Source: Octopus sinensis
Lineage: Eukaryota
DNA: 64,000 nucleotides
Direction of reading: 5' to 3'
Assembly (NCBI RefSeq): GCF_006345805.1
Contig: NC_043001.1
Span: 37,882,001-37,946,000 of the forward strand
Shown one piece after another: positions 19,551-46,901 of this stretch. The notes under the pieces are model-generated. The model was not told where the DNA came from and ran no database searches. It saw nothing but the letters and a program-made list of their open reading frames with translations. Within the stretch, counting starts at the first letter, position 1. Each line of letters begins with the position of its first letter. The translations under genes were made by a program, and so were the position numbers.

Positions 19551-19617
19551 ATGTCTATATTACAAGTCACAAAAATTAGCTGCTTTTTACTGATTGGAAT
19601 CCTTCCATATGCATTCG
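19551..19617 (+). CDS. Exon 1 (signal peptide) of MAM-like/mucin type I membrane protein gene
   Basis: ATG TCT ATA... gives MSILQVTKISCFLLIGILPYAF(G) with a hydrophobic core and A-x-G cleavage pattern. Donor G|gtaaga, phase 1, matches the next exon. Confidence 0.75.
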
Positions 19618-19763
19618 GTAAGACATTAATAGATTTATTTTCAAATAACAAATACTTTTTATTAGTCTATTTGATATCTGTATGCCTAGGACATATTGTG
19701 AGGAAAAAAACTGTGCGGTTGTATATCAATCACTCTTAAAGCTCTCAGGTACACAGGTATACA

Positions 19764-19820
<57 letters not shown>

Positions 19821-19959
19821 GCAAACAAATCAAACAAACAAGTACATACAGACATTCATGCACATAAATGCACACACTGTAAATATATTCAAATACATGC
19901 ATGCACACTCGCATATTCATGTGCACATGATCATAGCCATAAATATGTACATGAATTTA

Positions 19960-22300
19960 TATGTACACATGTATGGAGGACTGCAATAATCATTTTTATT
20001 AGCACTGTTACATTCATGTCTTGAGCAAGATTTGTTCTCTGTTGAAACTGCTGCCCAGGTCAGTCTTATGTCATGCTTGCACACATCTTTGTATCTCAAG
20101 AACGAGTAACCTTTACCTTTACACCCAAATTCCAGTTCATTAGAGAATAGCTCTTTTGGAATATGACCATCACCCAAACAACAAACATCTTCAACTTATC
20201 AAAATTGCCATTGGAGTGGGAAAAGAAAACACGGAGGATATGCTTACACTGGAAATCCTGTCCTGTCAGCAAACCTCAAGGATTCTACAGGAACACCTCA
20301 TATTGAAAATTGTTGTTTTTGTGAAAAGTGTGTAGTCCACAATTCACTGCTATAAATAATTGTACAAAAAAGCATAATCCTGGTAAACATATTTCTTGGC
20401 CCAATATTCTCTGATGTTATACTACCGTATTTTCTGAGTCTTGAGAGAGTAATAATTTCATTTCCAGTCAATCTCTTTCCAGTTTTCTTTCTCAGGCAAT
20501 GTTATCTATAGCAAACGAACAAAGATATTAAAACTTATGTATTATGTCCAGTCACTTACCTTTGATTATAATGCATAGAGGTTCTGGAGTACATTATCTC
20601 ATAAAATGGATTTTCTTGTGACTGAATGTAACTCCTAAAAATCTCTCCATTATGCTTTTTAAACTTCTGCAGAGTTTGGAGTTCATCATCAGCAAATGCC
20701 ATGCCTCTGATAGTAACTTTCCTTATCTTAGTTTTCACATTTAGTTTGGCTATATTGAAGAATCAGCCATCTTACATATCAGATGAATTCTTGAATATTT
20801 ATTTCATGAGTAGCATAAAGATACCAAGCTTATTTAATACTACTCTTCCTTCCAAATTCACAAGACACAGATCAATCATAGTGTACAGAGCTCAACATTT
20901 CATTATACAAGGACCTTATGATATTATAGATTAGGTTTGCAGTCAGTGAATGATATCATCTTAAAAAGACCATCTTAATCAATGAAGTCAAAAGCTCACA
21001 TATCCAGAGGAACTGTACCATTTCCCAATATTGAATGAGAAGCAATTGCAGAAGTACAAGCAAGATTGGCCTGCTATTTTTCAAGAACTCTATCAAAATA
21101 CAATCTTTTCTTAGGGCTTTGCCTATTGGCATCTAATCATAAAGTCCTTCTATGATAGGAAATTTGATCATACATGGGAAACTTTGAATACCATCAAAGT
21201 TGATTGGTCAACAAGTTTCTTTCTTCAATGATATTCAGTAAAGTTCCATCCATTTCTCTATCTATTCTGGTCTCACTGTAATTATTGTTACAGATTTGGG
21301 TTTGCTGATTGAGGTACCCTTTTTCTTTTTACCAGAATACATTTCCCTGATATTACTTGTGTCTCAGTTTGGAGGAGGGAGTTGGAGAGGAGTCAATAGT
21401 TATTAATGCCAATTCAGACAGTTACTTGAATTCTGCTTCTAGTTGTCACAAGTGTTTGGTGATTCTTGTAGAAGGCAAGATTTTTGTAGGCCTGAAGAGT
21501 CTATAATTTGCAGCACTGAAGTCACATAACCTTTCTAAATAGAATGAATGCCAATTATTGTGCTGCAGGATTTTTCTCAGAAGATTCTATTGCAGCAATG
21601 TGAAAGATTGTTTTGCAGTTGTCCAAGGGCTGCATGGCATTTTCTACAGTTTCTCAAGAAGACATATGAGAGCAATGAGTTAAAGTGGACAGGCTTTTCT
21701 GGTTTTGAATCGTTTGTTGCATTCAGGAATATCAACCCCTCTGTCTTTGGTGCAGACAAGTGAATAGTCTATATCACAAACTGCCTTGTTTTAAGTCCTG
21801 TTCATCCTATCTTAAGTAGCTTTAACTATTATCATTGACCATGTCAATATTGTAACAATCTAAGCAAATAGGCAATCTTCTTTTTATTGCATCACCTCTG
21901 GCATTAAAGTAGTGAAAAATTATCAAGGTTCTATTTCTAGGAAATGTTTGGTGTGACTGTCCAAGTTAACATCGAAGTCATCAACAACAGTAAGTCTAGT
22001 GTCATACATATAGAGAAGATGAAATCTTGTGAAGGAAAAGCATACACTCTGTATCTGAGCTAGTAAGGCTTAAAGAAGTGTATTCAAGACAGCAAACAAA
22101 ACACTATGTCCATGAGTTTCATATTCTCTCTTGCCTTACCAGAAAAATGAGTAGACAGCTTTTCTTAGGCTCCTAGATTCAATCTGACGGATATCTTGAA
22201 GAGCAACAGTGCACATAAAGATCTGACAAGAAGATTCGAAAATAGATTTCCGATGTCAATACAAATCCTTTGTACTGATTCTTTAACTTGAGCTAGTTGA
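19960..22300 (-). mobile_element. Decayed RTE (BovB-like) LINE in intron 1
   Basis: MAFADD RT motif and IPKELFSNEL...LRYKDVCKHDIR C-terminal motif. Confidence 0.65.
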
Positions 22301-22660
22301 TGTTAAATAACCAATTTATCAGCATAGTTATATTATGACTTCTAATATAGGCATAGACCAAACATTTTGGGGCAACAGAACTTGAAAGATGAGAACTCTA
22401 TTCTAAATGAAGGAATGTAAGCTATTAGACTAAGTGACTTGTTTAATATGAAGTCTAAAATATAAAAATTTTAATTCACTTACTCAATTAAATCTATTGA
22501 GAAAGGTATAAGCATCACAGAATCTCATTTCCCCTTTCTATATTAAACCTAATACTTTGAGTCTATGTAAAAAAAAATTGATATTAAAAATAAAGTAAAA
22601 TTATTTCAGTACACAATACTTTCAGAAAGCTAATAGTGTTTATATTTTCATAATATAAAG

Positions 22661-22762
22661 GTTCCTGGGAATGTAGTTTCCAAAAGGGAATTTGTGATTG
22701 GTCTCCTGCAAATAGCAAATGCTCCTGGAAATGGACAAACAAGCAACTTGATGGAGTTAAAG
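22661..22762 (+). CDS. Exon 2, N-terminal part of MAM-like domain
   Basis: aag|GT...AAAG|gtgaga, 102 nt, phase 1-1. Reads (G)SWECSFQKGICDWSPANSKCSWKWTNKQLDGVK, matching the MAM CxFExxxCxW...W start. Confidence 0.8.
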
Positions 22763-23914: not shown

Positions 23915-26900
23915 AATAAGAATTATTGGATGCTGGATACTGGATGGTTTCCGTGTTGAAGCTCCTAGGAGCTTGTTCACAGGTCTTTTCCACTAGTACA
24001 ATTAATTTGTCATGTGTGGTACAACACTTCAACAGTTGTAGCTAATAGTAACAGACAGGGTCAAATTTTGCTGGAAGCTTCTTCCAGTGTGCATCAAGCA
24101 TGTTTTTGAAGGCATTGATTGATGGAACTGTGATCACACTGTTTGACAGACTGTTCCATGTGGGGGTCGCATGCTGTACAAAAAAGCAGCTTCTAATATT
24201 GAGCCTACAGTGTGATCTTTCCAATTTTAGGTTGTGTCCTCTCGTATTTCTGCCTTGGAAGTAGTTAAATTGGGGGCAGTTGATCAGGTACAGGCTGTGC
24301 GTATACTTATACATGTTGATCATATCCCCGCTCAGAAGGTGATGTTTGAGACTAGACAGCGCTCTGGGTATGGCTTTTCTTTCAAGGATGCAATGAGTTT
24401 AGTGGCAACACATTGCATTATGCCGGGGTTGCCAAACTGTGTGTCTATATTCAAGAATCTGGCGAACTAGAAACTTGTACAGGTGGACGAAGACAACGGG
24501 TGATGAAGTGAAATAATCATCGGATGACTCCAAGGATTCGATTTGCTTTTGCAGTTGCTTGGTTTATGTGGTTCCTGAAGGTCAGCACTTTGTTGATCAA
24601 GACGCCAAGATCCCCCTCCACCTCACTTTCTGCTAGCTCCATCACAGTCCGTTCCCCCTGTGCATCCTAGCCTCTCATGTAGTATTTCTTGTCCATCTTC
24701 GGGTTCCCCACTCTCAAGACGGAACACTTCTCAAGATGGAACCGCATTTGCCAGTTCATCGACCACTTGTGAAGGCGATCCAGGTCGTCTTGCAACGTTG
24801 CCGTGGTCACATCAACGTAATTCCTTGCGAAGAATTTTGTGTCGTCAGCAATAACCTGACGTGCCTCTGGACATGCCGCGGCAGATCATTTATATACATG
24901 AGAAACAGTACGGGGCCAATGACATTGCTTTGTGAGATGCCACTTGTCACCTCTCCTCTCTCTGACTTCACGCCATTGAAACAGACTCATTGTGACTGGT
25001 GGCTCAAGAAGTTCCGGATCCACTGAAGGACATTTCCCTTGATACCATGAGCTTCTACTTTGGCTACAAGCCTACGAGGTGGGACACTGTCGAATGCTTT
25101 CATGTTATCCATGTAGATCGCATTGAGTCCTCCCCCTGCGTCCAGATGTCAAGAACATCAAGTATTTGCATCACACATGATCTCCCCTTTGTGAACCAAT
25201 GCTGTTCTTGGTTGATGAGGTCATTTCGCCGCAGGTGTTCAATGATGTTCTCACGAACAAGCACCTCCATCACCTTGCACAGTACACAAGTCAAGCTTAC
25301 TGGCCTGTAGTTGTTGACCACAAAACGGCTCCTTTTCTTGAATATGGGGGTGACGTCAGCAGTTCTCCACTCGTCTGGGATTTTGCTTGTCTCCATTGAT
25401 TTTCTGTAGACAATTGTGATTGGTAGAGCGAGTACATCCGATAGCTCGGAAAGTATGCATAGGCTGATTCCATCCGGTCCTGGGGTCTTGGCAATCTTCA
25501 GGCTTGTCAGCTGCTTGTGAACTTTTTCCACAGAAATGTTTAAGTTGGTCAGCTCTGTGTCATATGTGTACTCTGACATGTCTGGTAGATTGCTTTCCTT
25601 CTCTACAGTGAAGACACTCTGAAAGAAAGTGTTCAGCAGATCGGCTTTCTCTTTGTCTGTGATTGTCTTAGAACCATCACTTCTTTTCAAGTCTGCAGTA
25701 CCAGTCTTTGATTTCGTCTTTGACATCACGTATGACCAAAATGACTTCGGGTTTGTCTTGGCTTGTGTTGCTACCATTTCCTCTAATTTCTTCTTTGCTT
25801 TATGGCATGCCTTTGTCCCTTTATTTCTGCTCCTAATGTAGGTTTGAAATCTTGCCCAACGTCTATACAGTTTGTGCTTCTGCCACACTGTTCTAAGTGT
25901 ATCTCTATCGAGTCACTTCTTCCTTCTTGCTCTCGAGCCTCCCATCTTTGGTACATATTTCTCTGTTACTCTGTCCAATTCCTTGCGCAGCTTTTCCCAT
26001 GCCTCTCCAACTGATAGACATTTCAGCTCATCCACCCATCTGATATTTTCCAGGTCTTTCCTCATCTCTTTAATATTTGCCTTTGTAAAGTTGAAATATT
26101 CTTTCTTTCCTGTTTCTTGGTATGCATAGGACAAGCTGATGATTAATACTACATGGTCACTCTTCCCAAGGGATGGTGCTATAATGATATCATTGATCAT
26201 GTCTTCCCTGTTTGTCATCACCAGGTCATCTAAAGTTGGACACTCTCCTTCCCTGATTCTTGTTGGTTCTCTCTGGTGCTGTATCAGGAATGCTTCCTTT
26301 GTCGCCATGAAGAACTTGTTCGCTGCATGGTTCTCACCTTTTAGACTCCTGTCTTGTTCCCAATTTATATCGGGGTAGTTGAAGTCGCCGATTAGCAGTA
26401 GATATTGAGGTTTCTTGTCTGCCATGTTTAATAGCAATCTGTTTAGACTCTCATTATTTTCCTCTGAGTTTGTATTTGGGCTCCTGTAGAACAATCCAAA
26501 TGTTATAGTTTCTTCTCATAGTTTACAATCTATGAATGCACACTCTTCGAAGTCCATCTCTAAATCACCATTCAAGGATGGTCTCAGCTCATTCTTAACA
26601 TATAAGCATTATCCTCAACCTCTTTTCTCGAGATTGTGAAATGGTTCATATCTGGGAATTGTGATTTCACTCTCTTGGATGTCAAATCTCAAGTTCTTTG
26701 GTTTAATCACCACAACCCCCATCACTACAGGCTTACGTATCTCTATCATGGCCTCTAATTCAGTCCTTTTATTTAGAAGACTGTCAGTATTTGTATATAG
26801 ACAGGTAACTGAACTATGGCTATTCAACGTATATACATTTGGTCTTTTGTAAATAATTTTATAGCGGTCCGTGGTGCAGGATGATTTAAAACTATCTACA

Positions 26901-27970
26901 CACTTTCCGTTTATTCTGTCTAATTGCCCTCCTCCTCTCATGGTGGCTTCCGGTATTCCCCGATGTTCACCACTTTGCCATTTCTACACACACAATTCGT
27001 TGTGTTGTTCCCCGATTACTTGGCCTGATCTTGTTTCTCTTTGAGCTCCTTGAAGAGTGCTTCTTCCTCTTTCCTCTCTGAGGAGGTCATGTCATTTCTC
27101 GCATTGACATTCCTGATCAGCTTGGGTTCATCCACTTCATCTTGCTTTTTTTTTTTTGCTGCTTTCTTAACTTTCCAGAAAGTTTAGAGAACTTCATCCC
27201 TGGAGTGTTGGTTGGAGAACGAAAGCCTTAGTGGTCTAAAATTCTTTGCTTTTGTTTTTGCTACAATGAGCTTTCCAAGTCTACGGACATCTTTTGGGTC
27301 ATGCAGGCTATCCAAGCAGTCAATCGCTTTCATGAACCTCTTTACACTGCCAACATCTTCCTGTCTTCTTTTCTCTTTATCTTCCATAGTTGGTTCATCC
27401 AGTCCAAATATGACCAAATTTTTGTTCCTTCTTGCTCTGTCTTCCGACTCCACTCTTTGCTCTCTAGCTTTCTCCTCCATCAATTTCTCAATGTCATTTT
27501 TGCTGATTTCTGCTCCCGACGTTTCATTTGCTGCAACTCCTACTGCTAACAATGTCTTCACTGCTTCTGCCATCTTGGGTGGGAATTCTCCCGCTTCAAT
27601 CTTTTGAAGTCTGTTCTTCGTTTCCTTCATCTCACTTTCAAGAGAGTCCATTCTATCCTCCATCATACCAAATCTAAGGAGGAACTTCCTGGCAAGCTAA
27701 TTGCCCAGTTTGGGACAATACCAAGAGAGGCCAGATCCCTGTTCCCTTTGGTTTGTTTCTGCTCTGATTGCCTTGAACAGTGATTCGCCAAAACCCAAAC
27801 ATTTTGTGTGGTACCAGGCATGGCACAGCTCACAGCCAACTGACCTCTGTTTATCCTCCCCTTCTTCCTCACATATGTTGCAAATGCTCAGTTGCTTTTT
27901 GTTTTTTTGGTCCCTTTCAGTTCCTTTATCAGCAAACCCATACATGCATCCACACAGGCTGAGAAACAAT
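23915..27970 (-). mobile_element. Near full-length CR1-clade LINE with PHD-finger ORF1 (disrupted), intron 2
   Basis: ORF1 C-x2-C...CELCHAWYHTKC...WYCP; APE (CLYTNTDSL, IGDFNYPDINW, SDH); RT (PGPDGI, NYRPVSLT); C-terminal TPTWNSL. Confidence 0.93.
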
Positions 27971-28055: not shown

Positions 28056-29235
28056 TACAAAACTTTTATAATAACCCATCCTTATAGCTTATCTGTCCTT
28101 CCAGCTCAGACATCGGTACACTTAGTAAATACATCTTAGATAAGTATATCCCTACATTAATCAATAAATTAAAATTTAGCTTATGGTCTAATTCTTTTCA
28201 AGTTGTAGATTGGTTTACTTCTATTACTAATAAGGTAAACACTAAATTTATTCAGTTTGATATATCTAGCTTTTATTCATCCATCAACCCTATTATACTC
28301 AATAAGGCACTCTGGCATGCATACAATAAAGCAGGTCTCTCTAGAGAGGAAATTAATGTGGTACTGGCTGTCAGAAAATCAATCATTAAGTTTGATAACA
28401 AGTTGTGGGTCCGGAAGGATAATCCCAACGCCTTTGATGTCCCAATGGGAAGTTCAGATTCTGCTCAAATTGCAGATTTAGTCGGCATATATATACTTCA
28501 TGAAATGGCTGACCAGTTCCCAGACATCTGTGAAGGTCTATATCGTGATGATTGTTCGCTTTACCTCCAAAACAGTTCCAATCAAAAAATACAGAAGGTT
28601 AAGAATAGGTTAGTTAGGTCTTTTGTAAAATGGGCTTTCACATCATTTTTGACGATGAGATAACTAAAGCTAACTTCTTAGATATTACTCTTAATTTGCA
28701 TAATAACTCATACTTCCCATTCCACAAACCTTCCACCAATCTCAAGTATATAAGTCCATCCAGTAATCACGCTAGGGCAATTACTAAGAATTTAGTTAAA
28801 AACATTTCAGTTAGATTGTCTAAACTATTTGCCAATGATGACAATTTTAACGACAAGGCAGAATTTTATAACTCTGCTTTAGTTAAAGCAGGGTATAAAG
28901 AAAATGGCACATACATTGATTCTGCTCAATCTCATCCTTCATCTACTATTCGAGACAAGAAATCTAGTTGTAATAAGAAGAGTGACTTTAATTCTAATAT
29001 TGAAACCAATACAAAACATGATAAAATTCCTTTACGGGGTAAGAGAGGCAAGTGTTATTTAAGCCCATTTTTTCACTCTAGAGGTATTTCACCAATCTTT
29101 ATAGATAGTACCACTTACAATTTGACTTACTAGGAAAACTTTGGTTTGTTATTCCGTATGGAAGTCAAATTAAATCTAATCTTCCTTTGCAGTTCCGTGA
29201 AGCGGTTGGTAAGAACTTTCCAAAAAATTCTATAA
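28056..29235 (+). mobile_element. Penelope-like element RT fragment
   Basis: NFYNNP, FIQFDISSFYSSI, DVPMGS, GLYRDD, NFLDITL, LWFVIPY...KNFP. Confidence 0.88.
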
Positions 29236-29796: not shown

Positions 29797-29800
29797 TATA

Positions 29801-31064
29801 TCAGGTCATCCCATAAGTTCTGTCCGAATTTTGAATATAGAAAACAAGTGATCAAATGTTATATTTAATTGAAATTTAATCATCAATGTACTTTCCTTGA
29901 TTATCTATGACTTTCTTCCATCTATTTACAAGCTTTTTAATCCTATCAATGTAAAACTCTTTTGGTTTCAAAGCGAAGAACTCTGAAATGTCAGTTTCGA
30001 CCTCCACCTGGCTTGCGAAAGTTATGTCCCCCAAATGATTCTGTAAACTACGAAACAAATAGAAGTCTGAAGGAGCAAGATCAGGAGAATAAGGTGGTTG
30101 AGGATTTTTTTCCCAACCAAGCTCTTCGATCTTCTGTGATGTGATCTTTGCAATGTGGGGTCGCACATTGTCCTGATGAAACATCATTCCTTTTCGATTC
30201 ACTAAAGCGGGTCTTTATTTCTTCAAAGCTTGGTTCAAACGCTCTAATTGCTGACAGTAGACATGAGCATTAATTGTTGCATTAGGTGGTAACAATTCAA
30301 ACTGAATTACTCCTTTGCAATCCCACCAGATAGAGAGAAGAACCTTTTTCCCATGAAGTTCCCTTCTCGTTGTGGTTCAGTTTACGACATTTAACATTTC
30401 GATAGAAGATCCATTTTTCGTCACCAGTCACAAGTCTATCCAGAAAGGGGGAAATGAGTTCATGAGAATGGAGAGAAGAGCAGATGTCAACTCGGGATTT
30501 GCGGTGGCTTTCGGACAATTCATGAGGCACCCATTTTCCAAGATTAGGAACCTTTCCAAGTTGTTGAAGATGACGATGAACAGTTGTATGGTTTGATCTA
30601 AGTTTTATTGTCAAATTCTTCAACTGATAATGCAGGATTTTCTTCAAGTAATGCCTTAAGGAGCTTATCATCAAACTCAATTGGATGCCCTGTTCGATCT
30701 TCATCTTCAAGGCTGAAATCTCCACTTCTGAATTTTGCAAAGCATCTTCTGCAAGTTCTTTCATTCAAGCATTTTTTCCCATAAACTGAGTGTATGTTTC
30801 GAGTCGCTTCAGCTGTAGAATTTCCTTTTTTGTACTCATAAAGCATTATGTGCCTTAAATGCTCTTTGGATACTTTCACGTTAGAAAGGGTTTTAATCAA
30901 AGAAATTTTAATTCTATTATTCTCTAAAATAATATTTAATTAGTTTAAATGCACACAAATGCATAAAAATAATTTTTAATTCCATTAGACATCCTAAAAT
31001 ACTAATAAATTTCATTCAATTTTAGAAAAGGTAAAATCAGACAGAACTTTATGGGATGACCTGA
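29801..31064 (-). mobile_element. Full-length mariner transposon with frameshifted transposase
   Basis: TIRs TCAGGTCATCCCATAA(A)GTTCTGTC, TA TSD; WVPHEL, TGDEKW, HQDN, YSPDLAPSD split over three frames. Confidence 0.95.
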
Positions 31065-32714: not shown

Positions 32715-33590
32715 AAAAGGAGTACTCAAATACCAGAGGTAGAGTAATATGCTTTATTTAAAAGCAGCAGAAATATAACAAAAGCTGTTACTCAGTTTCA
32801 CGTTCCCGTTCATCCGACAGTTTTGTTAAAATAGAACAGAAATAACAATATGTTCAAAATTAGTTAAAGGATACACCTTTAAAAATGGATTTGTTTCACT
32901 GGTCCTTTCAAATAACGGTCTTAAGCATGCGATAAACAAAATAATCAAAATAAATGCACTCAATATAAATTACAAAATATAAAAATCGATGAAAAACCTT
33001 AAATCGAAGAGCGGATTCAAAATTTTAATATTTCACAACATTATATACGCATACTAAACCATCAATTTACATATATACATCAAAATACACAGATAGATGT
33101 ACACAGACCACATACATATGCAGACATATATATGCAAGACATAAAGGGGGCTGAGGGAGGCAACAGAAATCATAGTGGGTATAGTCATAAAAACTATCAA
33201 TATAAGATAGCTTATCATTAGACTTAGGGTAAGGTTTGACTTTGTCTGACTGTAAATCTAAATTTATATCTAAAAAATCTACACTTTTAAGGTTAGTATC
33301 TATCGTAATCCGTAAGCCCATCCTTTGGAAGAAAGCAATTAGATCCTTCCTAAGATTTATCTGATTCATGGCCGTTTAAATTATGGGTAACTATAAGGCC
33401 ATCATCCCTATATAATCCTGCGTCTATAAACGAGAATTCTAGCTTTAGATTGTGCAAAATACAAGCTCCTATCAGCACACATAACTCAGCCCCATCGTAT
33501 GCCGCCATCGGTACATCAACAAGAGAATTCTCACTATTTTTTAACAAAGAAGAATCCTCGTACAAAAGAAGTGATTTCCTCGCATGTATG
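32715..33590 (-). mobile_element. Penelope-like fragment (RT plus 3' terminus)
   Basis: DVPMAAYDGAELC, GLYRDDGL, VDFLDINLDL; hammerhead motif downstream. Confidence 0.85.
32785..32820 (-). ncRNA. Minimal type I hammerhead ribozyme-like motif
   Basis: CTGT-CGGATGA-ACG GGAA CGT-GAAA-CTGAG-TA-ACAG. Confidence 0.7.
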
Positions 33591-34178: not shown

Positions 34179-34246
<68 letters not shown>

Positions 34247-35001: not shown

Positions 35002-35246
35002 GTTATATGGTTTCTACTGGACAAAGCAAATGTACATCACAAATGAAATGGAAAGCGGCTACTTGGGGAGAAGCTGGGAAGCCTTTTTCCTTCTTATATC
35101 GAATAAATGGAAATGGTAAGGTTAGCTTAACAGTAACTTGTGCTGAATATGGTATACCTTGGGATACTCCTCATAAAATATGGACTTGTAATGCATCTCC
35201 AGCACATGAATGGACAAAGGCTCACATAAATTGCCCTTATAATTTG
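35002..35246 (+). CDS. Exon 3, core of MAM-like domain
   Basis: ttttacctag|GT...TTG|gtaaga, 245 nt, phase 1-0. Reads GYMVSTGQSKC...FSFLYRINGNGKVSLTVTC...KIWTC...EWTKAHINCPYNL, following the MAM pattern (GYM, FxFxY, W, WxxA). Confidence 0.8.
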
Positions 35247-38160: not shown

Positions 38161-39715
38161 TCAAAATCAAATCAAATCAAATCAAACCAAATCAAAATAG
38201 ATGAACATCAATGGAATTTGTATCTTTGTGGTACCAGTACCGGTGGCACACAAGAAAACCATCCGAACGTGGCCGTAGCCAGTACCGCATCGACTGGCCT
38301 CTGTGATGTGGGCACATAACAAACACCATCCGATCGTGGCCGTCCACCAGCCTCATCTGGCACCTGTGTCGGTGGCACATAAAAACACCAACCGAAGACC
38401 CGGCAAGACTAGTCAGGCCATAACCCGTGGCCCCTACTTGGGACGTAGTTAGTCCACCTGTGCATACCTTCCTTCCTTCTTGTGACACTTGTGAAGACCT
38501 GTGAAGACCTGTTGAGGCAAGTGAAAATCAAATCAAATCAGATCAAAATAGATGAACATCAATGGAATTTGTATCTTTGTGGTACCAGTGCCGGTGGCAC
38601 ACAAGAAAACCATCCGAACGTGGCCATAGCCAGTACCGCGTCGACTGGCCTCCGTGCTGTGGGCACGCAACAAACACCATCCGATCGTGGCCGTTCGCCA
38701 GCCTCATCTGGCACCTGTGTCGGTGGCACATAAAAACACCATCCGAAGACCGGCAAGACTAGTCAGGCCATAACCCGTGGCCCCTACCTGGGACGTAGTC
38801 AGTCCACCTGTGCATACCTTCCTTCTTGTGACACTTGTGAAGACCTGTTGAGGCAAGTGAAAATCAAATCAAATCAAAACAAATCAAAATAGATGAACAT
38901 CAATGGAATTTGTATCTTTGTGGTACCAGTGCCGGTGGCACACAAGAAAACCATCCGAACGTGGCCGTAGCCAGTACCGCGTCGACTGGCCTCCATGCTG
39001 TGGGCACGCAACAAACACCATCCGATCGTGGCCGTTCGCCAGCCTCATCTGGCACCTGTGTCGGTGGCACATAAAAACACCATCCGAAGACCCGGCAAGA
39101 CTAGTCAGGCCATAACCCGTGGCCCCTACCTGGGACGTAGTCAGTCCACCTGTGCATACCTTCCTTCTTGTGACACTTGTGAAGACCTGTTGAGGCAAGT
39201 GAAAATCAAATCAAATCAAAACAAATCAAAATAGATGAACATCAATGGAATTTGTATCTTTGTGGTACCAGTGCCGGTGGCACACAAGAAAATCATCCGA
39301 ACGTGGCCGTAGCCAGTACCGCATAGACTGGCCTCTGTGCTTTGGGGACGTAACAAACACCATCCGATCGTGGCCGTCCGCCAGCCTCATCTGGCACCTG
39401 TGTCGGTGGCACATAAAAACACCATCCGAGCGTGGCCGTCTGCCAGCCTCGTCTGGCACCTGTGTCGGTGGCACATAAAAACACCATCCGAGCGTGGCCG
39501 TTCGCCAGCCTCGTCTGGCACCTGTGTCGGTGGCACATAAAATCACCCACTACACTCTCGGAGTGGTTGGCGTTAGGAAGGGCATCCAGCTGTAGAAACA
39601 CTGCCAGATCTGACTGGCCTGGTGCAGCCTTCGGGCTCCCCAGACCCCAGTTGAACCGTCCAACCCATGCTAGCATGGAAAACGGACGCTAAATGATGAT
39701 GATGATGATGATGAT
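38161..39715 (+). mobile_element. Multimeric RTE-tailed non-coding retroposon (array A)
   Basis: Unit marker AAAATAGATGAACATC at 38194, 38545, 38886, 39228; ends in the RTE-type 3' stem-loop and (GAT)n. Confidence 0.85.
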
Positions 39716-40161
39716 AACTAGTCAACCATATATCTGTTCTGCCATAAAGCCTGTCAGTTTAAATTCTAACTTTACGAACTCCATCTCTTTTACATAAGTT
39801 CCAAAGAACACAGAAACAGTTCCTTCTCTGAATTAACCGCTTTAAGTTATAACTTAGTCTGACACCCATAGCACTTCTACTATACCATATCAACCTGATA
39901 CAGTAAATTCCTAGGACACATGAGACTTACTTTTGGAAATGACTTCTACATTGATCTTTGATCAATTACTTAGAATCCCCTGGATAATTTTCTGAACAAG
40001 CAACAGCAACACAACTATAAAGTTCTCTACTACATGTTTAATTATAATTAATAATCATTAACCATACAAATAAAGAAAATGATTCTTGAAGCATTCCTGC
40101 TACTGAAGGATTATGTTATTTTGAAAGTTTTCAATCTCATTCTATTTTTATTCTGTTTTAG

Positions 40162-40228
40162 GATCAAATCATTATTGAAGCTGAGTTTCATGGCAAATCA
40201 AATGTCATGATTGGAAAAATATGGAATG
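40162..40228 (+). CDS. Exon 4, C-terminal strands of MAM-like domain
   Basis: ttctgttttag|GAT...AATG|gtaagt, 67 nt, phase 0-1. DQIIIEAEFHGKSNVMIGKIWN resembles MAM FQIIFE...IAID. Confidence 0.8.
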
Positions 40229-40789
40229 GTAAGTAAGTTAATTGATATTGAAATCATGGCCATCCACACATACATGCATGTCCTTTATGGTCATGCACCC
40301 CAACACTGACACTCAAATTATCTAACCCCTCTCAAAACACTCCTATCTTCCCAACACTCATGCAGCCCCCCCCCCCACCTCTTCACTCTCATATGCCTAT
40401 CCACACACTCTCCATACTCTCTCTTTGTTCCTTACTCCCCACTCCAAGCCACTCAACACTCTCATGGTACTCTCTTCCTCTATCCTCTTCTATTCCCAAT
40501 ACTCTCATGGAGCATCCTCCTCTATCCCCTCTCTATAATTTATACCCTACTCTATTGTTCACTGAGGGTAGGCTCCAATACATCTCCCACACCATCTATT
40601 TCACTCTCTCTCACTCTGTCTCTTTATCTTTCTCTCTCTTTTCCACCTTCCTATCCCTTCCTGTTCTACTGGGGTGGCCAAATATCTCCTCTATAGTAAA
40701 ACAACTATATCTGTCTCTTGATCATACTCTAGCCTGGCACACAACTACTCCCATCAGTTCTACTTCCTCTCTCAACTAAGAGGTCTTTC

Positions 40790-42120
40790 TCTTACAAGTT
40801 ACTTGGCAACCCTCTGATGTTGGTGCCACATAAAAAGTACCTGTGCCAGTGCCACATATAAAGCACCTGAGCCAGTACCATGTAAAAAGTACCCAGTACA
40901 CTCTGGAAAGTGGTTGACATTAAGAAGGGCATCCAGTCTAAATAGACAATTGAAACCTGGTACACTCCTCCAGTTTACCAACTCCTGTCAAGTCATCCAA
41001 CCCATGCCAGCATGGAAAACAGATATTAAATGGTGATGATGATGACAACTGATGCTGGTGTGTTTACATCTCTGTAACTTAGCGGTTTGGTAAAGGAGAC
41101 CGATAGAATAAGTACTAGGCTTACAAAGAATAAGTCCTGGGTTCGATTTGCTCGACTAAAGGTGGTGCTCCAGCATGGCTGCAGTCAAATGACTGAAACA
41201 AGTAAAAGAGTAAAAGAGTAATTGGACATGTGCAAAGGTCTTCTGCCTACATGCAGACACAAGCATTTGCACAAGCCTTTTCAGGTGCTGAGAACCATTT
41301 CCTGGACACTTACTAGATATTTCTATCAAAACAACAGCATTAGAGAAGCCACAGTCAATGCAGGCACAATATGTTGTAGATCCAGTGTGATTGAAATGCC
41401 AGAGCAGGGGTACATATATTTCTGTGTTGGTAATAGCAATGATGTTAGGAGTGTGAATATAATTTTAGCAAAGAAATGGGTAAATAAAGTGATCAAGATA
41501 ATCAGAATGTGTAACAGGATAGTTAACTTTACACTAGTTTTGGAAAATATTTGAGTTACATCTCTGCATATGATCCACAATCTAGACTGGCAGATAAACA
41601 GGGGAACAGATTTCAATGATCTTTAAACTCTGCTTGCGAAGACCTGTTGAGGCAAGTGAAATCGAAATCAAATTCAATGACAGCATCGCATGACTGGCAC
41701 CCATGCTAGAGGAGCACTGAGAGCACCATCCGAGCATGATCATTGCCACGGCCGGTGACTGGCCCCCATGCCGGCGGCACGTAAAAAGCAGCATTTTAGT
41801 GTGATTGTTACCAGTGTCGCCTTAGTGGCACTTGTGCCAGTGGTACGTGGAAAAACAACATTCGAGCAAGGGTGTTGCCAGTACCGCTGGGCTGGCTCCT
41901 GTGCAGGTGACACATAAAAATACCATTTGAGCGTGGCCACTGCCAGTACCGCCTGACTGGCCCTCATGCCGGTGGCATGTAAAAGCACCCACTACACTCT
42001 CAGAGTTGTTGGCGTTAGGAAGGGCATCCAGCTGTAGAAACTCAGTCGGATCAGATTGGAGCCTAGTGCAGCCATCTGGCTTGCCAGTCCCCAGTCAAAC
42101 CGCCCAACCCATGCCAGCAT
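40790..42120 (+). mobile_element. Cluster of RTE pieces (3' tail at 40790-41045; APE remnant at 41225-41640 fused to 3'UTR at 41640-42120) with an intervening SINE A fragment
   Basis: ILAKKWVNKVIKIIR APE trace; shared 3'UTR blocks. Confidence 0.7.
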
Positions 42121-43694
42121 ATTATTTCATGTAGCTCTTTATTTTTCATAATTTCTTTTTTAACAAAATTGTCCTGTATTTCTTTAACAGTACATGTAAT
42201 AGATTTGTGCAGTTTGTGCCTTTTATAGCTTTCTGATTGGAAATCTAAGTTCAACTTGGTAATATCTGGCAAAATGTATACTAAGAATGCATAATACATC
42301 TCTGCAATTGGATTTGTTAATGAGTCCAGCACATTTTAATCTGCACAGTTGTCATCTTCAATAGTAGCAGTAGTAACGAATAACACTAGAGCATACCATT
42401 ATTCTAGTATTCTTTTGATAACTTGTTCGAAAGATAGCCACCTTGTACAACTTACATGTAATAATTTATGAGGACTTATTAGAGTAAATGCCTGAAATCC
42501 TTCATATTCCTGCAGTCTCTTTGGGCTATTTGAAATGGATGAATATGTGCTTCTAGCATATGCTCCCTTCTGTCCCATTACTACACTAGCATTGTCGCTG
42601 GTAAATCTTGTCAAATTTTTCGTAAGGAATATCACATAAGGTGAAGAATCTTTCAACAGAGAAAAAAATTCCATTAGCTGAGAAATCCTTGGCTTCCAAA
42701 AAATTAAATAACTATCAATAATTTCTTGAGTGCTAAATCTAGCTAACAGAACAAGCGGGTTTTTTGTACTTACATCAGTAGTTTCATCAGCATGTCATGA
42801 AAACTTACTCTCTTTTAACTGTTTAATGAGGTTTTCAAAGTAATAAAGGCCTAAAACTTTTTATATTTGAATAGCTTTGGTTCTTGCACACTTAATATCT
42901 TTAGCTATTTTGGAATAAGGACATGCATTCTGAATTAGTCCAGGTAAATGATCCATAAGTCTCACTAGTAAGTTATGTTCTGCAATGAAGGATCAAAAGC
43001 TTGAGCTCTGTAGCTGCTACGTTTGTAATATGAACAGAAGTTTTAGGCTGCAAAAAGTCGGTCAGTTTTCCGCTTTTATTCTTTGAATTAACATTTTTAA
43101 TAAGTTCACCTGTTTTTCCATGCCTCTCCAGGTGAGTCATACTGCCTTGAATTTTACACCAAAATTTACAATATGCTCTTTCGATATTTGTTTTACTTGG
43201 TTCTAACCATGATGAAAATTGAGAATCCGATAAAAGCTTGTTTGATAATTTATGATTATATTGTTTAATTCTTTTCTTTGGTGGAGTTAAACCTACGTCA
43301 ATTTCATCATTGCTTTTATCTTTCAAATTCTTGTCATGAGGGGTATAAATCACTCATAACTGATAAAAGTTTAACGAGATAGCAAGGAAGCACATGCCAC
43401 TTATGTATAAAACATGCTACTGACTGGCATTAGAGGCAGGAAGCCAATAATATTGGAAGGTATCCCATTATAAAATGTTGCAAAATATATTTTGATGTAA
43501 AATAGTTAGTCCAATAGTAATGTAATATAGTTATTGTTACATTGCTCAGTTACATATGCTGTAAGCTTAATTGTTTACATAAAGCAAAAAAATTTGAAAA
43601 AGTATGAAGTTATTACAGCGTAGTACCAAAAGTATAACCGCACACCAAAAGTACCAAATTTGGTACAATAGTACCAGGTTCGGCAAGAATACTG
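42120..43694 (-). mobile_element. Decayed hAT transposon
   Basis: SDNASVVMG, TRWLSFEQVIKRIL, BED/TTF-like WLEP...YCKF...H; terminus CAGTATT with GGTAC subterminal repeats. Confidence 0.75.
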
Positions 43695-43729
43695 AGGTCT
43701 AACAACTGACTGTTAGTATCACTATACCA

Positions 43730-43796
<67 letters not shown>

Positions 43797-44162
43797 ACTC
43801 ACTCACTCACTCACTCTCACTCTCAGCATGAATTGCAGAATAGTGAGTATTCTAGACAGCCAGTTGTTACTAGCACTTCACAGAGTTCCTGTCCAAAACA
43901 CTTAACTCTAAAATATCTCCATCTTCAAACTACATAGTAGTTGCCATAAAGTAGCTTCAAGTCTCCATTCCATGTAATGTTAAATGATTCCTTAGATTTG
44001 TGTGCAATACTTTCATATAGGCTTGGGGAATTCACTTCAGTTTTCAGTCTCAGATCAGGATCCATTAATCCACTCAGTTAAGCTTGCCAATTGGTTTAAT
44101 AACATTGGTTTTGTTGCAACTTGTGGTTGCAGGCTATGTCATCAGATGTCATGAGTATATTA

Positions 44163-45056
44163 CATCATCATCATCATTTAACGTCCGCTTTCCATGCTAG
44201 CATGGGTTGGACGATTTGACTGAGGGCTGGTGAACCAGATGGCTGCACCAGGCTTCAATCTTGATCTGGCAGAGTTTCTACAGCTGGATACCCTTCCTAA
44301 TGCCAACCACTCCAAGTGTAGTGGGTGCTTTTACGTGCCACCAGCATGGGGCCAGTCAGGCGGTACTGGCAATGACCTCACTCAAATCTTTTACACATGT
44401 CACTGGCACAGGTGTCAGTAAGGTGATGCTAGTAACGATCAAGCTCAAATGGTGTCTTTTACATGCCACTGGCATGGAGGCCAGATAGCCGCTCTGGCAA
44501 TGATCACGCTCGGCTGGTGCTCTTAACACCCTTCTAGCATGGGGCTCAAGTGCCAGCAAGGCAACGCTGGTAACGATTACACTCGAATGGTGCCTTTTAT
44601 GTGCCACTGGCACGGAAGCCGGTTAACCGCTCTGTCAACAATCATACTTGTATGGTGCTCTTTGCACCTCGCTAGCATGGATGCCAGTCATCGAATTTGA
44701 CTTTGATTTTGATTTCACTTGCGTCAACAGGTCTTCGCAAGCAGAGTTTTTGTGTCCAATGAAGGAAAAGGTACGCATAAGTGGGCTGGTTATGCCTCTG
44801 GCATAGGCCATGAGATTGTGGTCTCATTTGGCTTGCTGGGTCTTCTCACGCACAGCATATTTCCAAAAGTTTCACTAGTCATTTCCTTGGTGTGGCCTAA
44901 AGTTCAATGGTCGTGCTTCACCAACCACTTCATCCCAGGTCTTCCTGGGTCTACCTCTTCCACAGGTTCCCTCAACTGCTAGGGTATGGCACTTTTTTAC
45001 ACAGCTATCCTCATACATTCTCGCCACATGACCATACCAGCACAGTCGTCTCTTGC
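44163..45056 (-). mobile_element. 5'-truncated RTE (ORF2 end plus 3'UTR)
   Basis: GRPGMKW...WKYAVREKTQQAK* followed by the modular 3'UTR and (GAT)n. Confidence 0.85.
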
Positions 45057-45852
45057 AGCATTGGTAGCTGATTGAGTTAATGAATGAAAATATGTTTCTA
45101 GGGCTGTGTGAAGAAGTAAATAAACAATGCCCACGAACATTTTAACTGAAGAATTTATTTTCACAGATTAAGACAAACTACATTGGCCTTTTACAATTAA
45201 CAACATCAATAATTACATGCTGGGAAAGAGATACTGCTCTGAGTTTACACCAAGCATTTGATATGGCAACATTTGACTTGCCCAACATACCTGAAAACAG
45301 TTGTGCAATCTTTGTGGTGATGGAGGTTCTTGGTCATCTATCTGCATCAAATGTCTTAGCTGTCTTCCTGAGTTGTCTGTCTGAGTCGTCTGTAAAGGTT
45401 GTCTGGTGTGGCAAGAATGGTTGCACATATCACTCAGCTGCCTCAACTTTCTGCATGGCAAGAGGTGAGATGTATGAATGAGATAGCTTCTCTCAACACT
45501 GTACCAACAGTTTTTTATAGGATAGTGGAAGAAGATTTCAGAAGAATGCATCATGTAAGAGTTTCATGCTGATTGGCTGCTTAATAGATCAATCATGTGA
45601 AACTATCGTGGTTTGGTCGTGGTGTCTGATCAGTTATCTAGCAGTTCAGTTTTGAATCATTGCTACGGGTTTTATTACAGACTGCATGAGACTGTTACTC
45701 TTATCTTACTCAGAGTCCACAGGTGAAATCCACCTTCTAAGAGAGAAAATTGTAAGAGATTATGACTATAACAAATATGATGATGTAAGGAATAGAGATT
45801 ATTTCTGTTTCCATTCATGCCATTAAATTTAATTTTAATTCTTTCTTTTCAG

Positions 45853-46901
45853 AAAATGGGCCCCAAACAGAAAATTCTTGTCCACCAGTTCCACCCACAA
45901 CCACACAAGCACCAACTACCACCACTCTACCAACAACTACAACCAGGCCAACAACTACAACCAGGCCAACAACTACAACTAGACCAACAACTACAACCAG
46001 ACCAACAACTACAACAACACCAACAACTACAACCACACCAACAACAACAACCACACCAACAACTACAACCACACCAACAACTACAACCACACCAACAACT
46101 ACAACAACAACAACCACACCAACTACAACCACACCAACAACTACAACCAGACCAACAACTACAACCAGACCAACAACTACAACCAGACCAACAACTACAA
46201 CCAGACCAACAACTACAACCACACCAACAACTACAACCACACCAACAACTACAACCAGACCAACAACTACAACCACACCAACAACAACAGCAACAACCAC
46301 ACAATCAACAGCTACAACTGCACCAGGACTAACAACAACTACACCAACCATCAAAAGGACCCTTTCACCAAGGACATCAACAAAAGGTACAAACCTCCCA
46401 AGCTCAATAATGAGTACAAAAATGGAATATCATTCAAGCAAAACCATTTCAAAATTATCAACAACTTTCCATCCTGGTAAAGATATTTCAACAGTTTCAA
46501 TATTGGACATTATAAAGAACAGTACAAAGATGTTTAATACCAATACTCCTACGCAGAAAACATCTATAGCATCTACAACTAACAATATACTACCAACAAC
46601 TTTACTTCATCATAACACAAATGGACACAAACAAACTAAGACAACATCTGTCGGAAATAAAGTTACCAAACCAAGCAAAGGTTTTACCGTTTATACCACT
46701 ACTGAGAGTAGCAGAAGCAAATTTGAAAAAATGAAAAGCAATCTTCACAAGAAAAGAACAGTTATCCTTGCATCCATTTTTGGTACTGCAAGTATTTTAG
46801 CAATTGTATTCACGATTGTATGGAGCAGACGAAGATCAAAGAAACATTCAAAGTTGTTAGATGATAAAGTCCCTGTATTGTCTCTTGATGCCATGAAATG
46901 A
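45853..46901 (+). CDS. Exon 5: last MAM Cys, Thr-rich mucin stalk, TM helix, cytoplasmic tail, stop
   Basis: ctttcttttcag|AA, phase 1. Open frame continuous with track ORF 46410-46901. TM segment TVILASIFGTASILAIVFTIVW followed by SRRRSKK. The five exons total 1530 nt = 509 aa + TGA. Confidence 0.85.
45931..46280 (+). repeat. Coding minisatellite, 18-bp unit CCAACAACTACAACCA(C/G)A = PTTTT(T/R), about 19 copies
   Basis: Directly visible tandem repeat inside exon 5. Confidence 0.9.

What the first reader, a model, noticed from the sequence alone, without database searches (positions are those of the whole stretch)
19551..46901. Hidden 5-exon gene for a single-MAM, mucin-stalk type I membrane protein (509 aa)
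Seen: five exons with GT-AG sites and consistent phases (1,1,0,1) spread over 27 kb of repeats and joining into an uninterrupted frame. Known: MAM domains mediate adhesion and interaction, and MAM plus mucin occurs in zonadhesin. I do not recognise this compact SP-MAM-mucin-TM-short-tail architecture as a named gene. It could be a lineage-specific adhesion, mucosal or gamete surface protein.
Basis: partly seen in the sequence, partly recalled or inferred. Interest (0 to 1): 0.7.

Follow-up and report, generated by a model that had tools for sequence, protein, structure and literature searches.

The report
Octopus MAM-head, mucin-stalk membrane protein gene
The five exons are real and join into an intact octopus gene for a cell-surface protein that holds a very divergent MAM binding domain on a long sugar-coated stalk; it belongs to a small, uncharacterised, fast-evolving cephalopod family, so it is a sound but fairly ordinary lineage-specific gene.

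Summary
Five + strand exons (19551-19617, 22661-22762, 35002-35246, 40162-40228, 45853-46901) have GT-AG sites and phases 1,1,0,1, and give a 509-aa open frame.

The gene is colinear with Octopus sinensis LOC115212404, an uncharacterised protein. Introns are about 91-92% identical and the exon boundaries are the same.

The layout is signal peptide, a 147-aa Cys-rich domain, about 21 PTTTT[R/T] repeats, a Ser/Thr-rich stalk, a TM helix and a 25-aa basic tail.

The MAM call holds, but not by the direct test. Pfam PF00629 misses the octopus proteins even at E<=10. Three other lines support it:
- A family profile hits the neuropilin-1 MAM at E 8.5e-6.
- Six of six non-octopus relatives hit PF00629.
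- An AlphaFold model (pLDDT 88) matches MAM structures best (TM 0.71-0.74).

An exhaustive search found only about eight true relatives. All the named ones are cephalopods, and several share the MAM–stalk–TM layout.

Evolution is fast: dN/dS is about 1.2 against the ortholog and 0.5-0.6 against a paralog. The stalk repeat has grown from 3 to about 21 copies.

The nearest named architecture is the arthropod class C scavenger receptor, but the CCP and somatomedin B domains are absent. Function is inferred only, as a surface recognition or adhesion receptor. Interest is modest.

The parts
19551..19617 (+). Exon 1: ATG plus the signal peptide (MSILQVTKISCFLLIGILPYAF, and the first base of G23). 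Donor G|gtaaga, phase 1.
   Evidence: tblastn with O. sinensis proteins gives 87-100% identity. The N-terminal hydrophobic window scores 1.7 on Kyte-Doolittle.
22661..22762 (+). Exon 2: the N-terminal part of the MAM-like domain (SWECSFQKGICDWSPANSKCSWKWTNKQLDGVK), carrying the C-x-F-x4-C-x-W motif. This is the most variable part between species.
   Evidence: It is 86% nt identical to the orthologue, and dN/dS is 2.4 on small counts.
35002..35246 (+). Exon 3: the core of the MAM-like beta sandwich (GYMVSTGQ...FSFLYRINGNGKVSLTV...WTCNASPAHEWTKAHINCPYNL). It ends in phase 0.
   Evidence: It is 93.5% nt identical to the orthologue. Distant relatives P0009, P0011, P0014 and P0022 hit here by tblastn.
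40162..40228 (+). Exon 4: the last strands of the MAM-like domain (DQIIIEAEFHGKSNVMIGKIWN). This corresponds to the canonical '..FE....G.IAIDDI' end of MAM.
   Evidence: Located by tblastn. It is 98.5% nt identical to the orthologue.
45853..46901 (+). Exon 5: the linker with the last Cys (C170), the PTTTT[R/T] mucin repeats, the non-repetitive Ser/Thr-rich stalk, the TM helix (aa 463-484), the basic 25-aa tail and the TGA stop.
45929..46289 (+). An 18-bp tandem repeat inside exon 5 (19.7 copies, 92% matches) that encodes PTTTTR/PTTTTT. Counted at the protein level there are about 21 units, against 3 in O. sinensis and O. vulgaris.

Best explanation
Shown: this is an intact, five-exon, protein-coding gene of an Octopus species, and it is the positional orthologue of O. 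sinensis LOC115212404. It encodes a 509-aa type I membrane glycoprotein with these parts:
- a cleavable signal peptide (aa 1-23);
- one highly divergent MAM domain (aa 24-170, 8 Cys, jelly-roll beta sandwich);
- about 21 PTTTT[R/T] repeats followed by a Ser/Thr-rich segment (aa 171-461);
- one TM helix (aa 463-484);
- a 25-aa basic cytoplasmic tail (RRRSKK...).

Inferred: the Thr/Pro repeats would be densely O-glycosylated and would form a stiff mucin rod that holds the MAM head far above the glycocalyx. The MAM head would be the working part. It would bind a partner, either another copy of itself (MAM domains oligomerise in meprin and the neuropilins) or a foreign or extracellular ligand (as the MAM of arthropod class C scavenger receptors does). 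The short basic tail would give only anchoring or endocytic coupling.

The gene belongs to a small cephalopod-restricted family that sits in a tandem cluster. The family evolves quickly at the N-terminal loop of the MAM domain and in stalk length. That is the pattern expected of a recognition receptor (immune or mucosal surface) rather than a housekeeping adhesion molecule. The anatomy is near certain (about 0.95). The recognition-receptor mechanism is the most likely reading but is unproven, at roughly one chance in three. The confidence given is a blend of the two.
For: Gene model and splice sites. Orthology: introns are 91-92% identical and colinear, and exon boundaries are identical. Architecture. 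MAM homology rests on four results. (1) The family profile A3 against PDB sequences gives neuropilin-1 MAM 5l73 at E 8.5e-6 over profile positions 5-138, NRP2 at 8e-5, MDGA1 at 0.047 and LAST-MAM at 0.1. (2) Six of the 10 family domains hit PF00629 at E<=1, best 1.1e-6. (3) P0009 scores 38.7 bits against a gathering threshold of 26.4. (4) The AF2 model has pLDDT 88.3 and pTM 0.85, and Foldseek puts NRP1 MAM on top at E 4.5e-8 with TMq 0.71-0.74, meprin beta at 0.66-0.71, LAST-MAM at 0.67 and CBMs at 0.62 or below. The family is small and cephalopod-restricted as far as named members go: only 10 hits among 1.84 billion representatives, 2 of them spurious bacterial Ig repeats, with named members in Octopus and Sepia. 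Relatives are transcribed: uninterrupted CDS lie on 0.9-1.8 kb Logan contigs, and SRR20545817 is Sepia esculenta larval RNA-seq. The relatives P0009, P0010 and P0014 repeat the SP-MAM-S/T stalk-TM-short tail layout. Fast evolution: dN/dS is 1.21 against the orthologue and 0.46-0.60 against the paralogue, and the stalk repeat has gone from 3 to about 21 units. Analogy: SR-C has CCP, MAM, somatomedin B, a Ser/Thr-rich region and a TM segment (PMC6191154), and its MAM binds a viral envelope protein and drives uptake (PMC5222524).
Against: There is no transcript or protein evidence for this species' copy, and no expression or tissue data for any octopus member. Pfam PF00629 does not detect the octopus proteins themselves. 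A dN/dS near 1 against the orthologue is statistically indistinguishable from neutrality (binomial p 0.82). The clustering of substitutions is only marginal (p about 0.03 for one statistic, not significant for two others). The O. sinensis orthologue carries an in-frame TAG just before the TM segment, so membrane anchoring is not conserved in every assembly. The ligand, glycosylation and oligomeric state are all inferred.
Confidence: 0.55

Rival explanations
1. The protein is a membrane-tethered barrier mucin. On this reading the working part is the O-glycosylated PTTTT stalk, which provides hydration, lubrication and anti-adhesion on skin, sucker, gut or gill epithelium. The MAM head would be only a cap or an oligomerisation module.
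For: 67% of residues 171-345 are Ser or Thr and 17% are Pro. The repeat number has changed seven-fold between close species, as in the VNTRs of vertebrate mucins. MAM-containing proteins and mucins are found in octopus skin mucus proteomes, although this protein is not named there (PMC10138644).
Against: The MAM scaffold is the best-conserved part across cephalopods, with invariant Cys, GY, Y, G-x-G and W-x-C positions. The stalks share no sequence at all. The O. sinensis orthologue has only 3 repeats. No SEA or other domain typical of tethered mucins is present.
Confidence: 0.2
2. The protein is a gamete- or reproductive-tract recognition protein, zonadhesin-like in logic. The MAM head would mediate species-specific sperm-egg or sperm-tract adhesion, which would explain the rapid evolution.
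For: dN/dS is at or above 1 against the orthologue, with changes concentrated in one N-terminal loop. The gene sits in a tandem paralogue cluster. MAM plus mucin plus TM occurs in zonadhesin (established knowledge).
Against: There are no VWD or EGF domains. A family member is expressed in whole Sepia esculenta larvae, which have no mature gonads. No tissue data exist for octopus.
Confidence: 0.1
3. The gene is drifting under relaxed constraint as a redundant member of a tandem cluster. It is still intact here but has no maintained function, and it is heading towards pseudogenisation.
For: dN/dS is 1.21 against the orthologue and is not different from 1. Exon identity (about 93%) is barely above intron identity (91-92%). 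The O. sinensis orthologue has a premature TAG before the TM segment. The paralogue LOC115212323 is annotated as a 191-aa truncated product, although DNA homologous to the stalk and TM follows it. No transcript-derived copy of the octopus members exists in the Logan-based collection.
Against: The 1530-nt frame is open and all four splice-site pairs are intact. Paralogue comparisons give dN/dS of 0.46-0.60, with p 0.03 for one pair. The structural core residues are invariant between octopus, cuttlefish and the other relatives. The TM segment and the positive-inside tail are preserved.
Confidence: 0.15
4. There is no gene here. The five pieces are chance open frames, or relics inside repeats, that happen to join.
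For: The surroundings are dense in repeats and full of spurious ORFs.
Against: Exon-for-exon conservation with identical boundaries in O. sinensis. NCBI gene models exist for the orthologue. A confident fold is predicted across all the exon junctions. Distant transcript-derived homologues align across the junctions.
Confidence: 0.02

Closest known systems
Octopus sinensis LOC115212404 (XP_029637157.2 and XP_036359013.1, 'uncharacterized protein'), with paralogue LOC115212323; O. vulgaris CAI9722624, CAI9722628 and CAI9722629; O. bimaculoides A0A0L8GPU6 ('MAM domain-containing protein')
   Same: LOC115212404 is the positional orthologue. It has the same five exons and boundaries, 91-92% intron identity, and 86-87% protein identity over the signal peptide, MAM domain and linker. 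The stalk, TM and tail are homologous.
   Different: The window copy has about 21 PTTTT[R/T] units against 3. It also has a 10-aa deletion in the stalk, a different and longer tail, and no premature stop before the TM segment. The O. sinensis assembly does have such a stop, a TAG at L001 29468-29470. None of these proteins has been studied.
Arthropod class C scavenger receptors (Drosophila dSR-CI, Spodoptera Sf-SR-C, shrimp MjSRC)
   Same: They are type I membrane proteins with a single MAM domain, a Ser/Thr-rich (mucin-like) stalk, one TM helix and a short tail (PMC6191154). Their MAM domain is a ligand-binding and oligomerising head (PMC5222524). The Sf-SR-C MAM structure 8yt7 is among the Foldseek hits.
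   Different: SR-C proteins have two N-terminal CCP (sushi) domains, and dSR-CI and Sf-SR-C also have a somatomedin B domain. Here the mature protein starts directly with the MAM domain, and Pfam finds neither of the other two. No sequence-level orthology was detected, so the resemblance is architectural and probably convergent.
Canonical MAM domains (PF00629) of neuropilin-1/2, meprin alpha/beta, MDGA1 and LAST-MAM
   Same: The fold is the same and there is profile-level sequence similarity. Shared motifs are the N-terminal C-x-F...C-x-W, the Y-x-x-x-G-x-G strand, W...G..W, and the terminal I-I-x-E ... I-A-I-x-x-I strands.
   Different: Identity is only 12-16%. The octopus sequences fall below any Pfam score. 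They are shorter than canonical MAM domains (147 aa against about 160-170), and their Cys pattern differs, with 8 Cys of which about 6 are conserved in the family. The domain partners also differ: CUB and F5/8C in the neuropilins, astacin and TRAF in the meprins, Ig in MDGA.
Zonadhesin
   Same: It combines MAM, a mucin-like region and a TM helix with a short tail, and it is a rapidly evolving recognition protein (established knowledge).
   Different: Zonadhesin has several MAM domains plus large VWD/TIL arrays and an EGF domain. None of these is present here.

Membership tests
MAM domain (Pfam PF00629) | The sequence scores above the Pfam gathering threshold (26.4 bits). | tested here: not met
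   There is no PF00629 hit even at E<=10 for the 509-aa protein, for its isolated domain, or for the three octopus homologues.
MAM domain (Pfam PF00629) | Homology to bona fide MAM domains is shown through family members or a profile. | tested here: met
   The octopus-only profile hits P0009 at E 1.4e-13, and P0009 scores 38.7 bits on PF00629. All 6 non-octopus family domains hit PF00629 at E<=1, best 1.1e-6. The family profile hits NRP1 MAM 5l73 at E 8.5e-6, NRP2 at 8e-5 and NRP1 ectodomain at 2.5e-4.
MAM domain (Pfam PF00629) | A jelly-roll beta-sandwich fold that superposes best on solved MAM domains. | tested here: met
   The AF2 model has pLDDT 88.3 and pTM 0.85, with 10 strands. Foldseek PDB rank 1-2 is NRP1 MAM (E 4.5e-8, TMq 0.71-0.74), followed by meprin beta at 0.66-0.71 and LAST-MAM at 0.67. 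Other jelly rolls (CBMs, Eph LBD) reach 0.62 at most.
MAM domain (Pfam PF00629) | The conserved cysteine framework (four conserved Cys in canonical MAM; from established knowledge). | tested here: inconclusive
   The two N-terminal Cys (C27 and C34) align with Cys of the NRP1 MAM. C43, C119 and (where present) C170 are invariant in the family, but they are not aligned to Cys in NRP1. Disulfide pairing could not be read from the model summary.
MAM domain (Pfam PF00629) | Extracellular location in a secreted or membrane protein. | tested here: met
   A signal peptide lies upstream, and a TM helix with a positive-inside tail lies downstream.
Class C scavenger receptor (SR-C) | N-terminal CCP (sushi) domains. 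| tested here: not met
   No CCP hit was found, and the mature N-terminus is the MAM domain itself.
Class C scavenger receptor (SR-C) | A somatomedin B domain between the MAM domain and the stalk (dSR-CI, Sf-SR-C; PMC6191154). | tested here: not met
   There is no Pfam hit. Only 5 residues separate C170 from the first PTTT unit.
Class C scavenger receptor (SR-C) | A single MAM domain, then a Ser/Thr-rich stalk, a TM helix and a short cytoplasmic tail. | tested here: met
   compared with PMC6191154.
Class C scavenger receptor (SR-C) | Binding and uptake of polyanionic, microbial or viral ligands by phagocytes. | not testable with these tools
   This needs binding and uptake assays, and no expression data are available.
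Zonadhesin-type gamete adhesins | VWD/TIL arrays following the MAM and mucin regions. | tested here: not met
   There are no VWD, TIL or EGF hits.
Membrane-tethered mucins (MUC1/MUC13/MUC16 type) | A tandem-repeat Pro/Thr/Ser domain. | tested here: met
   18-bp unit, 19.7 copies, encoding PTTTT[R/T]. Ser plus Thr make up 67% of the region.
Membrane-tethered mucins (MUC1/MUC13/MUC16 type) | A juxtamembrane SEA (or VWD-type) cleavage domain. | tested here: not met
   No SEA hit was found.

The most novel reading that the evidence does not exclude
Cephalopods have evolved their own family of MAM-on-a-mucin-stalk receptors, with membrane-bound and truncated or secreted paralogues in a tandem cluster. 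This family would play the role that class C scavenger receptors play in arthropods: germline-encoded pattern-recognition or uptake receptors on hemocytes or mucosal epithelia. Diversifying selection would act on one loop of the MAM head, and stalk length would vary between species as a VNTR.
Probability: 0.15. Interest if true: 0.55.

Novelty: new member of a known kind. Interest (0 to 1): 0.3.

Why it matters
Cephalopod innate immunity and surface biology rest on very few characterised receptors. This family is small, restricted to cephalopods as far as its named members show, and fast-evolving. It has a recognisable binding head, a simple architecture and a single-exon stalk whose length changes seven-fold between sister species. 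That makes it a tractable candidate for a recognition receptor. It is also a useful annotation lesson. Pfam misses the domain. Three public gene models of relatives look mis-built: one reads an exon in the wrong frame, one runs into an intronic repeat, and one has a non-canonical internal junction that bypasses a stop codon. This species' full-length form is absent from a 15-billion-protein collection. Beyond that, the gene is an ordinary lineage-specific membrane glycoprotein, and nothing about its mechanism is unexpected.

Tried and rejected
- Direct Pfam scans of the partial and full protein and of the octopus homologues gave no MAM hit; the only hit was a meaningless FlhE match at E 0.1.
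- phmmer of the domain, and of the octopus-only profile, against PDB sequences gave only noise: titin Ig and mitoribosomal uS9 at E about 0.8.
- My own scan for exon 4 using a 'DD' motif, expected from the canonical IAIDDI, failed because the motif here is IGKIW. The exon was then found by tblastn.
- The word-indexed search with family profile A3, and with P0009, added nothing named.
- The first AF2 model, built from 5 sequences, was mediocre (pLDDT 71.6) and did not separate MAM from CBM folds well. It was superseded by the 10-sequence model.
- A search for a second paralogue or extra MAM exons in the window found none.
- Other host genes in the window: the ORFs of 110 aa or more in the flanks look like LINE RT and repeat-derived sequence, but I read them by eye and did not scan them against Pfam.
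- A test for clustering of substitutions gave one marginal statistic (p 0.03) and two non-significant ones, so I claim no positive selection.
- Literature look-ups by locus and accession found nothing.
- Only one of the four Logan runs could be tied to an organism: SRR20545817 is Sepia esculenta.
- The hits P0008 and P0013 from the exhaustive search are bacterial Ig-repeat proteins that match short stretches only, so I discarded them as spurious.

Full report
**1. The observation**

Stop-to-stop frames on the + strand and the raw sequence show five exons:
- 19551-19617
- 22661-22762
- 35002-35246
- 40162-40228
- 45853-46901

The donors read G|gtaaga, G|gtgaga, G|gtaaga and G|gtaagt. The acceptors are AT- or pyrimidine-rich tracts ending in ag. 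The phases after exons 1-4 are 1,1,0,1. The joined CDS is 1530 nt, which is 509 codons plus TGA.

I first looked for exon 4 with a canonical-MAM 'DD' motif and missed it. tblastn with octopus homologues then placed it at 40162. The introns are 3.0, 12.2, 4.9 and 5.6 kb. They are filled with a LINE (endonuclease 25913-26494 and RT 25100-25888, minus strand), a Mos1-type transposase relic (29876-30900, minus strand), a 342-bp tandem array (38169-39429) and microsatellites.

**2. Is it a real gene?**

The N-terminal 138 aa find four octopus proteins at E 5e-77 to 2e-29:
- O. sinensis LOC115212404
- O. sinensis LOC115212323
- O. bimaculoides A0A0L8GPU6
- O. vulgaris CAI9722624

The O. sinensis LOC115212404 locus (L001, CM016863.1:37.79 Mb) is colinear with the window. 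Intron blocks are 91-92% identical over 2.5-3 kb. Each of the five exons maps one-to-one with the same boundaries.

The window gene is therefore the orthologue of LOC115212404 in a different Octopus species (dS 0.07). The paralogue LOC115212323 lies 6 kb downstream in O. sinensis. It is only 78-83% identical in introns. No paralogue or extra MAM-like exon lies in the window.

The exact 509-aa product is not in a 15-billion-protein collection. I have no transcript data for this species. Support for the junctions is comparative: the NCBI models of the orthologue use the same junctions, transcript-derived distant homologues align across them, and a confident fold spans them.

**3. Anatomy of the product**

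| Residues | Feature |
|---|---|
| 1-23 | Signal peptide |
| 24-170 | Cys-rich domain: 8 Cys and one NAS sequon |
| 171 to about 320 | About 21 PTTTT[R/T] units, encoded by an 18-bp tandem repeat at 45929-46289 (19.7 copies, 92% matches) |
| To 461 | Non-repetitive Ser/Thr-rich segment |
| 463-484 | TM helix (Kyte-Doolittle 2.4) |
| 485-509 | Tail, SRRRSKKHSKLLDDKVPVLSLDAMK |

The basic cluster just after the helix fixes the type I orientation by the positive-inside rule. That the stalk is O-glycosylated is an inference from its composition (67% Ser plus Thr, 17% Pro).

**4. Is the head a MAM domain?**

The direct test fails. hmmscan against Pfam gives no PF00629 hit, even at E<=10, for the window protein, for its isolated domain, or for the octopus homologues. 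phmmer and an octopus-only profile against PDB sequences give only noise.

Deeper tests succeed.

(a) An exhaustive HMMER search of 1.84 billion representative proteins with the octopus profile returns just 10 hits. Two are spurious bacterial Ig-repeat proteins. The others are the octopus proteins plus P0009 (E 1.4e-13), P0010, P0014, P0012 and a Sepia pharaonis protein, P0011.

(b) P0009 scores 38.7 bits on PF00629, above the gathering threshold of 26.4. P0010 and P0014 score 24.9 bits. Scanned domain by domain, all six non-octopus domains hit PF00629 at E<=1 (best 1.1e-6), and none of the four octopus domains does.

(c) A ten-sequence family alignment (A3) was used as a profile against PDB sequences:

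| Target | E-value |
|---|---|
| Neuropilin-1 MAM domain 5l73 (profile 5-138 against chain 23-176) | 8.5e-6 |
| Neuropilin-2 | 8e-5 |
| Neuropilin-1 ectodomain | 2.5e-4 |
| MDGA1 | 0.047 |
| LAST-MAM | 0.1 |

The aligned motifs are the canonical ones: C-x-F...C-x-W, Y-x-x-x-G, W...G..W, I-I-x-E and I-A-I-x-x-I.

(d) AlphaFold2 with A3 gives pLDDT 88.3 and pTM 0.85, an all-beta domain of 10 strands. Foldseek against the PDB ranks the neuropilin-1 MAM first (E 4.5e-8, TMq 0.71-0.74). Meprin beta follows at 0.66-0.71 and LAST-MAM at 0.67. Carbohydrate-binding modules and other jelly rolls stay at 0.62 or below.

The earlier five-sequence model (pLDDT 71.6) gave the same top hits with less separation. 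I conclude that the head is a genuine but very divergent MAM domain, and that the octopus branch is the most divergent of the family.

**5. The family**

P0009 (two MAM domains), P0010 and P0014 repeat the layout: signal peptide, MAM, Ser/Thr-rich stalk, TM helix and short tail. They and P0012 come from 0.9-1.8 kb Logan contigs that carry the uninterrupted CDS, which means they are transcripts. Run SRR20545817 is Sepia esculenta larval RNA-seq (PMC10466719). The other runs could not be assigned to an organism.

Every named member is a cephalopod (Octopus or Sepia). No paper mentions the octopus loci.

**6. Evolutionary rate**

Over residues 24-160, Nei-Gojobori dN/dS comes out as follows:

| Comparison | dN/dS | Note |
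|---|---|---|
| Window vs orthologue | 1.21 | 25.8 non-synonymous and 5.2 synonymous differences; not different from 1, p 0.82 |
| Window vs paralogue | 0.60 | p 0.11 |
| O. sinensis orthologue vs paralogue | 0.46 | p 0.03 |

Exon 2, which encodes the N-terminal loop SPANSK / TRDEY / TGKEY / TGYEQ, has dN/dS 2.4 on tiny counts. Eight of the 19 MAM substitutions fall within one 20-residue window (p about 0.03), but two other clustering statistics are not significant.

The stalk repeat has about 21 units here, against 3 in O. sinensis and O. vulgaris. The tail also differs. In the O. sinensis assembly the orthologous last exon has an in-frame TAG eight codons before ILASIFG (L001 29468-29470), where O. 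vulgaris has Tyr and the window has Asn. The family is therefore weakly constrained overall. These data cannot separate diversifying selection from partial relaxation.

**7. Mechanism**

Shown: the anatomy and the fold.

Inferred: a rigid O-glycosylated rod presents a MAM head well above the membrane. The head binds either itself or a ligand. The tail is too short for anything beyond anchoring or endocytic coupling.

The nearest named architecture is the arthropod class C scavenger receptor. [quoted passage not shown] Its MAM binds WSSV VP19 and triggers uptake in shrimp hemocytes (PMC5222524). The octopus protein lacks the CCP and somatomedin B domains and shows no sequence orthology, so it is not an SR-C. 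It may work like one.

The rivals are a barrier mucin, a gamete-recognition protein, and a redundant gene drifting under relaxed constraint. The chance-ORF reading is excluded.

**8. Verdict**

The finding is correct in observation and largely correct in interpretation. The gene is a new species' member of an already predicted but uncharacterised cephalopod family of MAM-domain surface glycoproteins. It is mildly interesting as a candidate lineage-specific recognition receptor and as an annotation lesson. It is not mechanistically surprising.

Noticed in passing
L001 29468-29470 (O. sinensis CM016863.1), homologous to window ~46760: The O. sinensis orthologue has an in-frame TAG eight codons before the TM-coding ILASIFG. 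Isoform X1 (348 aa) therefore ends before the membrane anchor. Isoform X2 (239 aa) reaches the TM only through an internal junction for which I could see no GT donor. O. vulgaris has Tyr at this codon and the window has Asn. The TAG could be a real truncation or polymorphism, or it could be an assembly error.
   Followed up: partly
window 22658-22762 (exon 2, alternative frame); window 40960-41049 and ~8 other copies (e.g. 39644-39718, 51136-51210, 59356-59433): Public models of relatives look mis-built. O. vulgaris CAI9722629 (P0007) contains exon 2 translated in the wrong frame (97% match in another frame) and a duplicated exon-4 peptide. The Asp-rich tail of O. bimaculoides A0A0L8GPU6 matches a dispersed intronic repeat ('TPVEPSNPC*HGKRTLNDDDDDD') rather than the true exon 5.
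   Followed up: partly
window 38169-39429 (intron 3); related copies 59409-60696: A 342-bp tandem array (3.7 copies, 94% matches), followed by a 62-bp array at 39355-39547. The same unit recurs about 20 kb downstream of the gene on both strands. It is probably a SINE- or satellite-like octopus repeat.
   Followed up: no
window 24600-27700 (-) and 47621-50398 (+): LINE-type retrotransposon remains. In intron 2 there are an endonuclease (PF14529, E 4.5e-10) and the start of an RT (PF00078). Just 0.7 kb downstream of the gene's stop codon there is a longer set of ORFs on the + strand that look like endonuclease and RT. That downstream element was not scanned against Pfam.
   Followed up: partly
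window 29876-30900 (-): A degenerate Mos1/mariner-type transposase in intron 2 (HTH_48, E 3e-22), split over three ORFs. A 73%-identical copy lies in intron 1 of the O. sinensis paralogue (L006 10342-11616).
   Followed up: partly
window 19170-19466: A G/C-rich triplet low-complexity tract, reading as poly-Gly, poly-Pro or poly-Thr depending on frame. It ends about 85 bp upstream of the start codon, where a core promoter or 5' UTR would be expected.
   Followed up: no
window 19551-19617 vs L006 10001-10067 and L001 10001-10067: Exon 1 of the window gene is closer to the O. sinensis paralogue LOC115212323 (97%, with an identical signal peptide) than to the positional orthologue (94%). This hints at gene conversion between the tandem copies, or at a derived change in O. 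sinensis.
   Followed up: no
L006 33161-34243 vs window 45713-46838: The paralogue LOC115212323 is annotated as a 191-aa protein with no TM helix. Even so, DNA homologous to the whole window exon 5 (repeats, stalk and TM; 74% identity over about 1.1 kb) follows its exon 4. The short product may reflect a frameshifted or mis-annotated last exon, or a genuinely secreted paralogue.
   Followed up: no
window 28088-29130 (+) and 33067-33565 (-): Two related ORF sets ('...VPMGSSDSAQIADLVGIYILHEM...' and '...VPMAAYDGAELCVLIGACILHNL...') have no Pfam hit. They probably belong to one unclassified transposable-element family, present in both orientations inside intron 2.
   Followed up: partly
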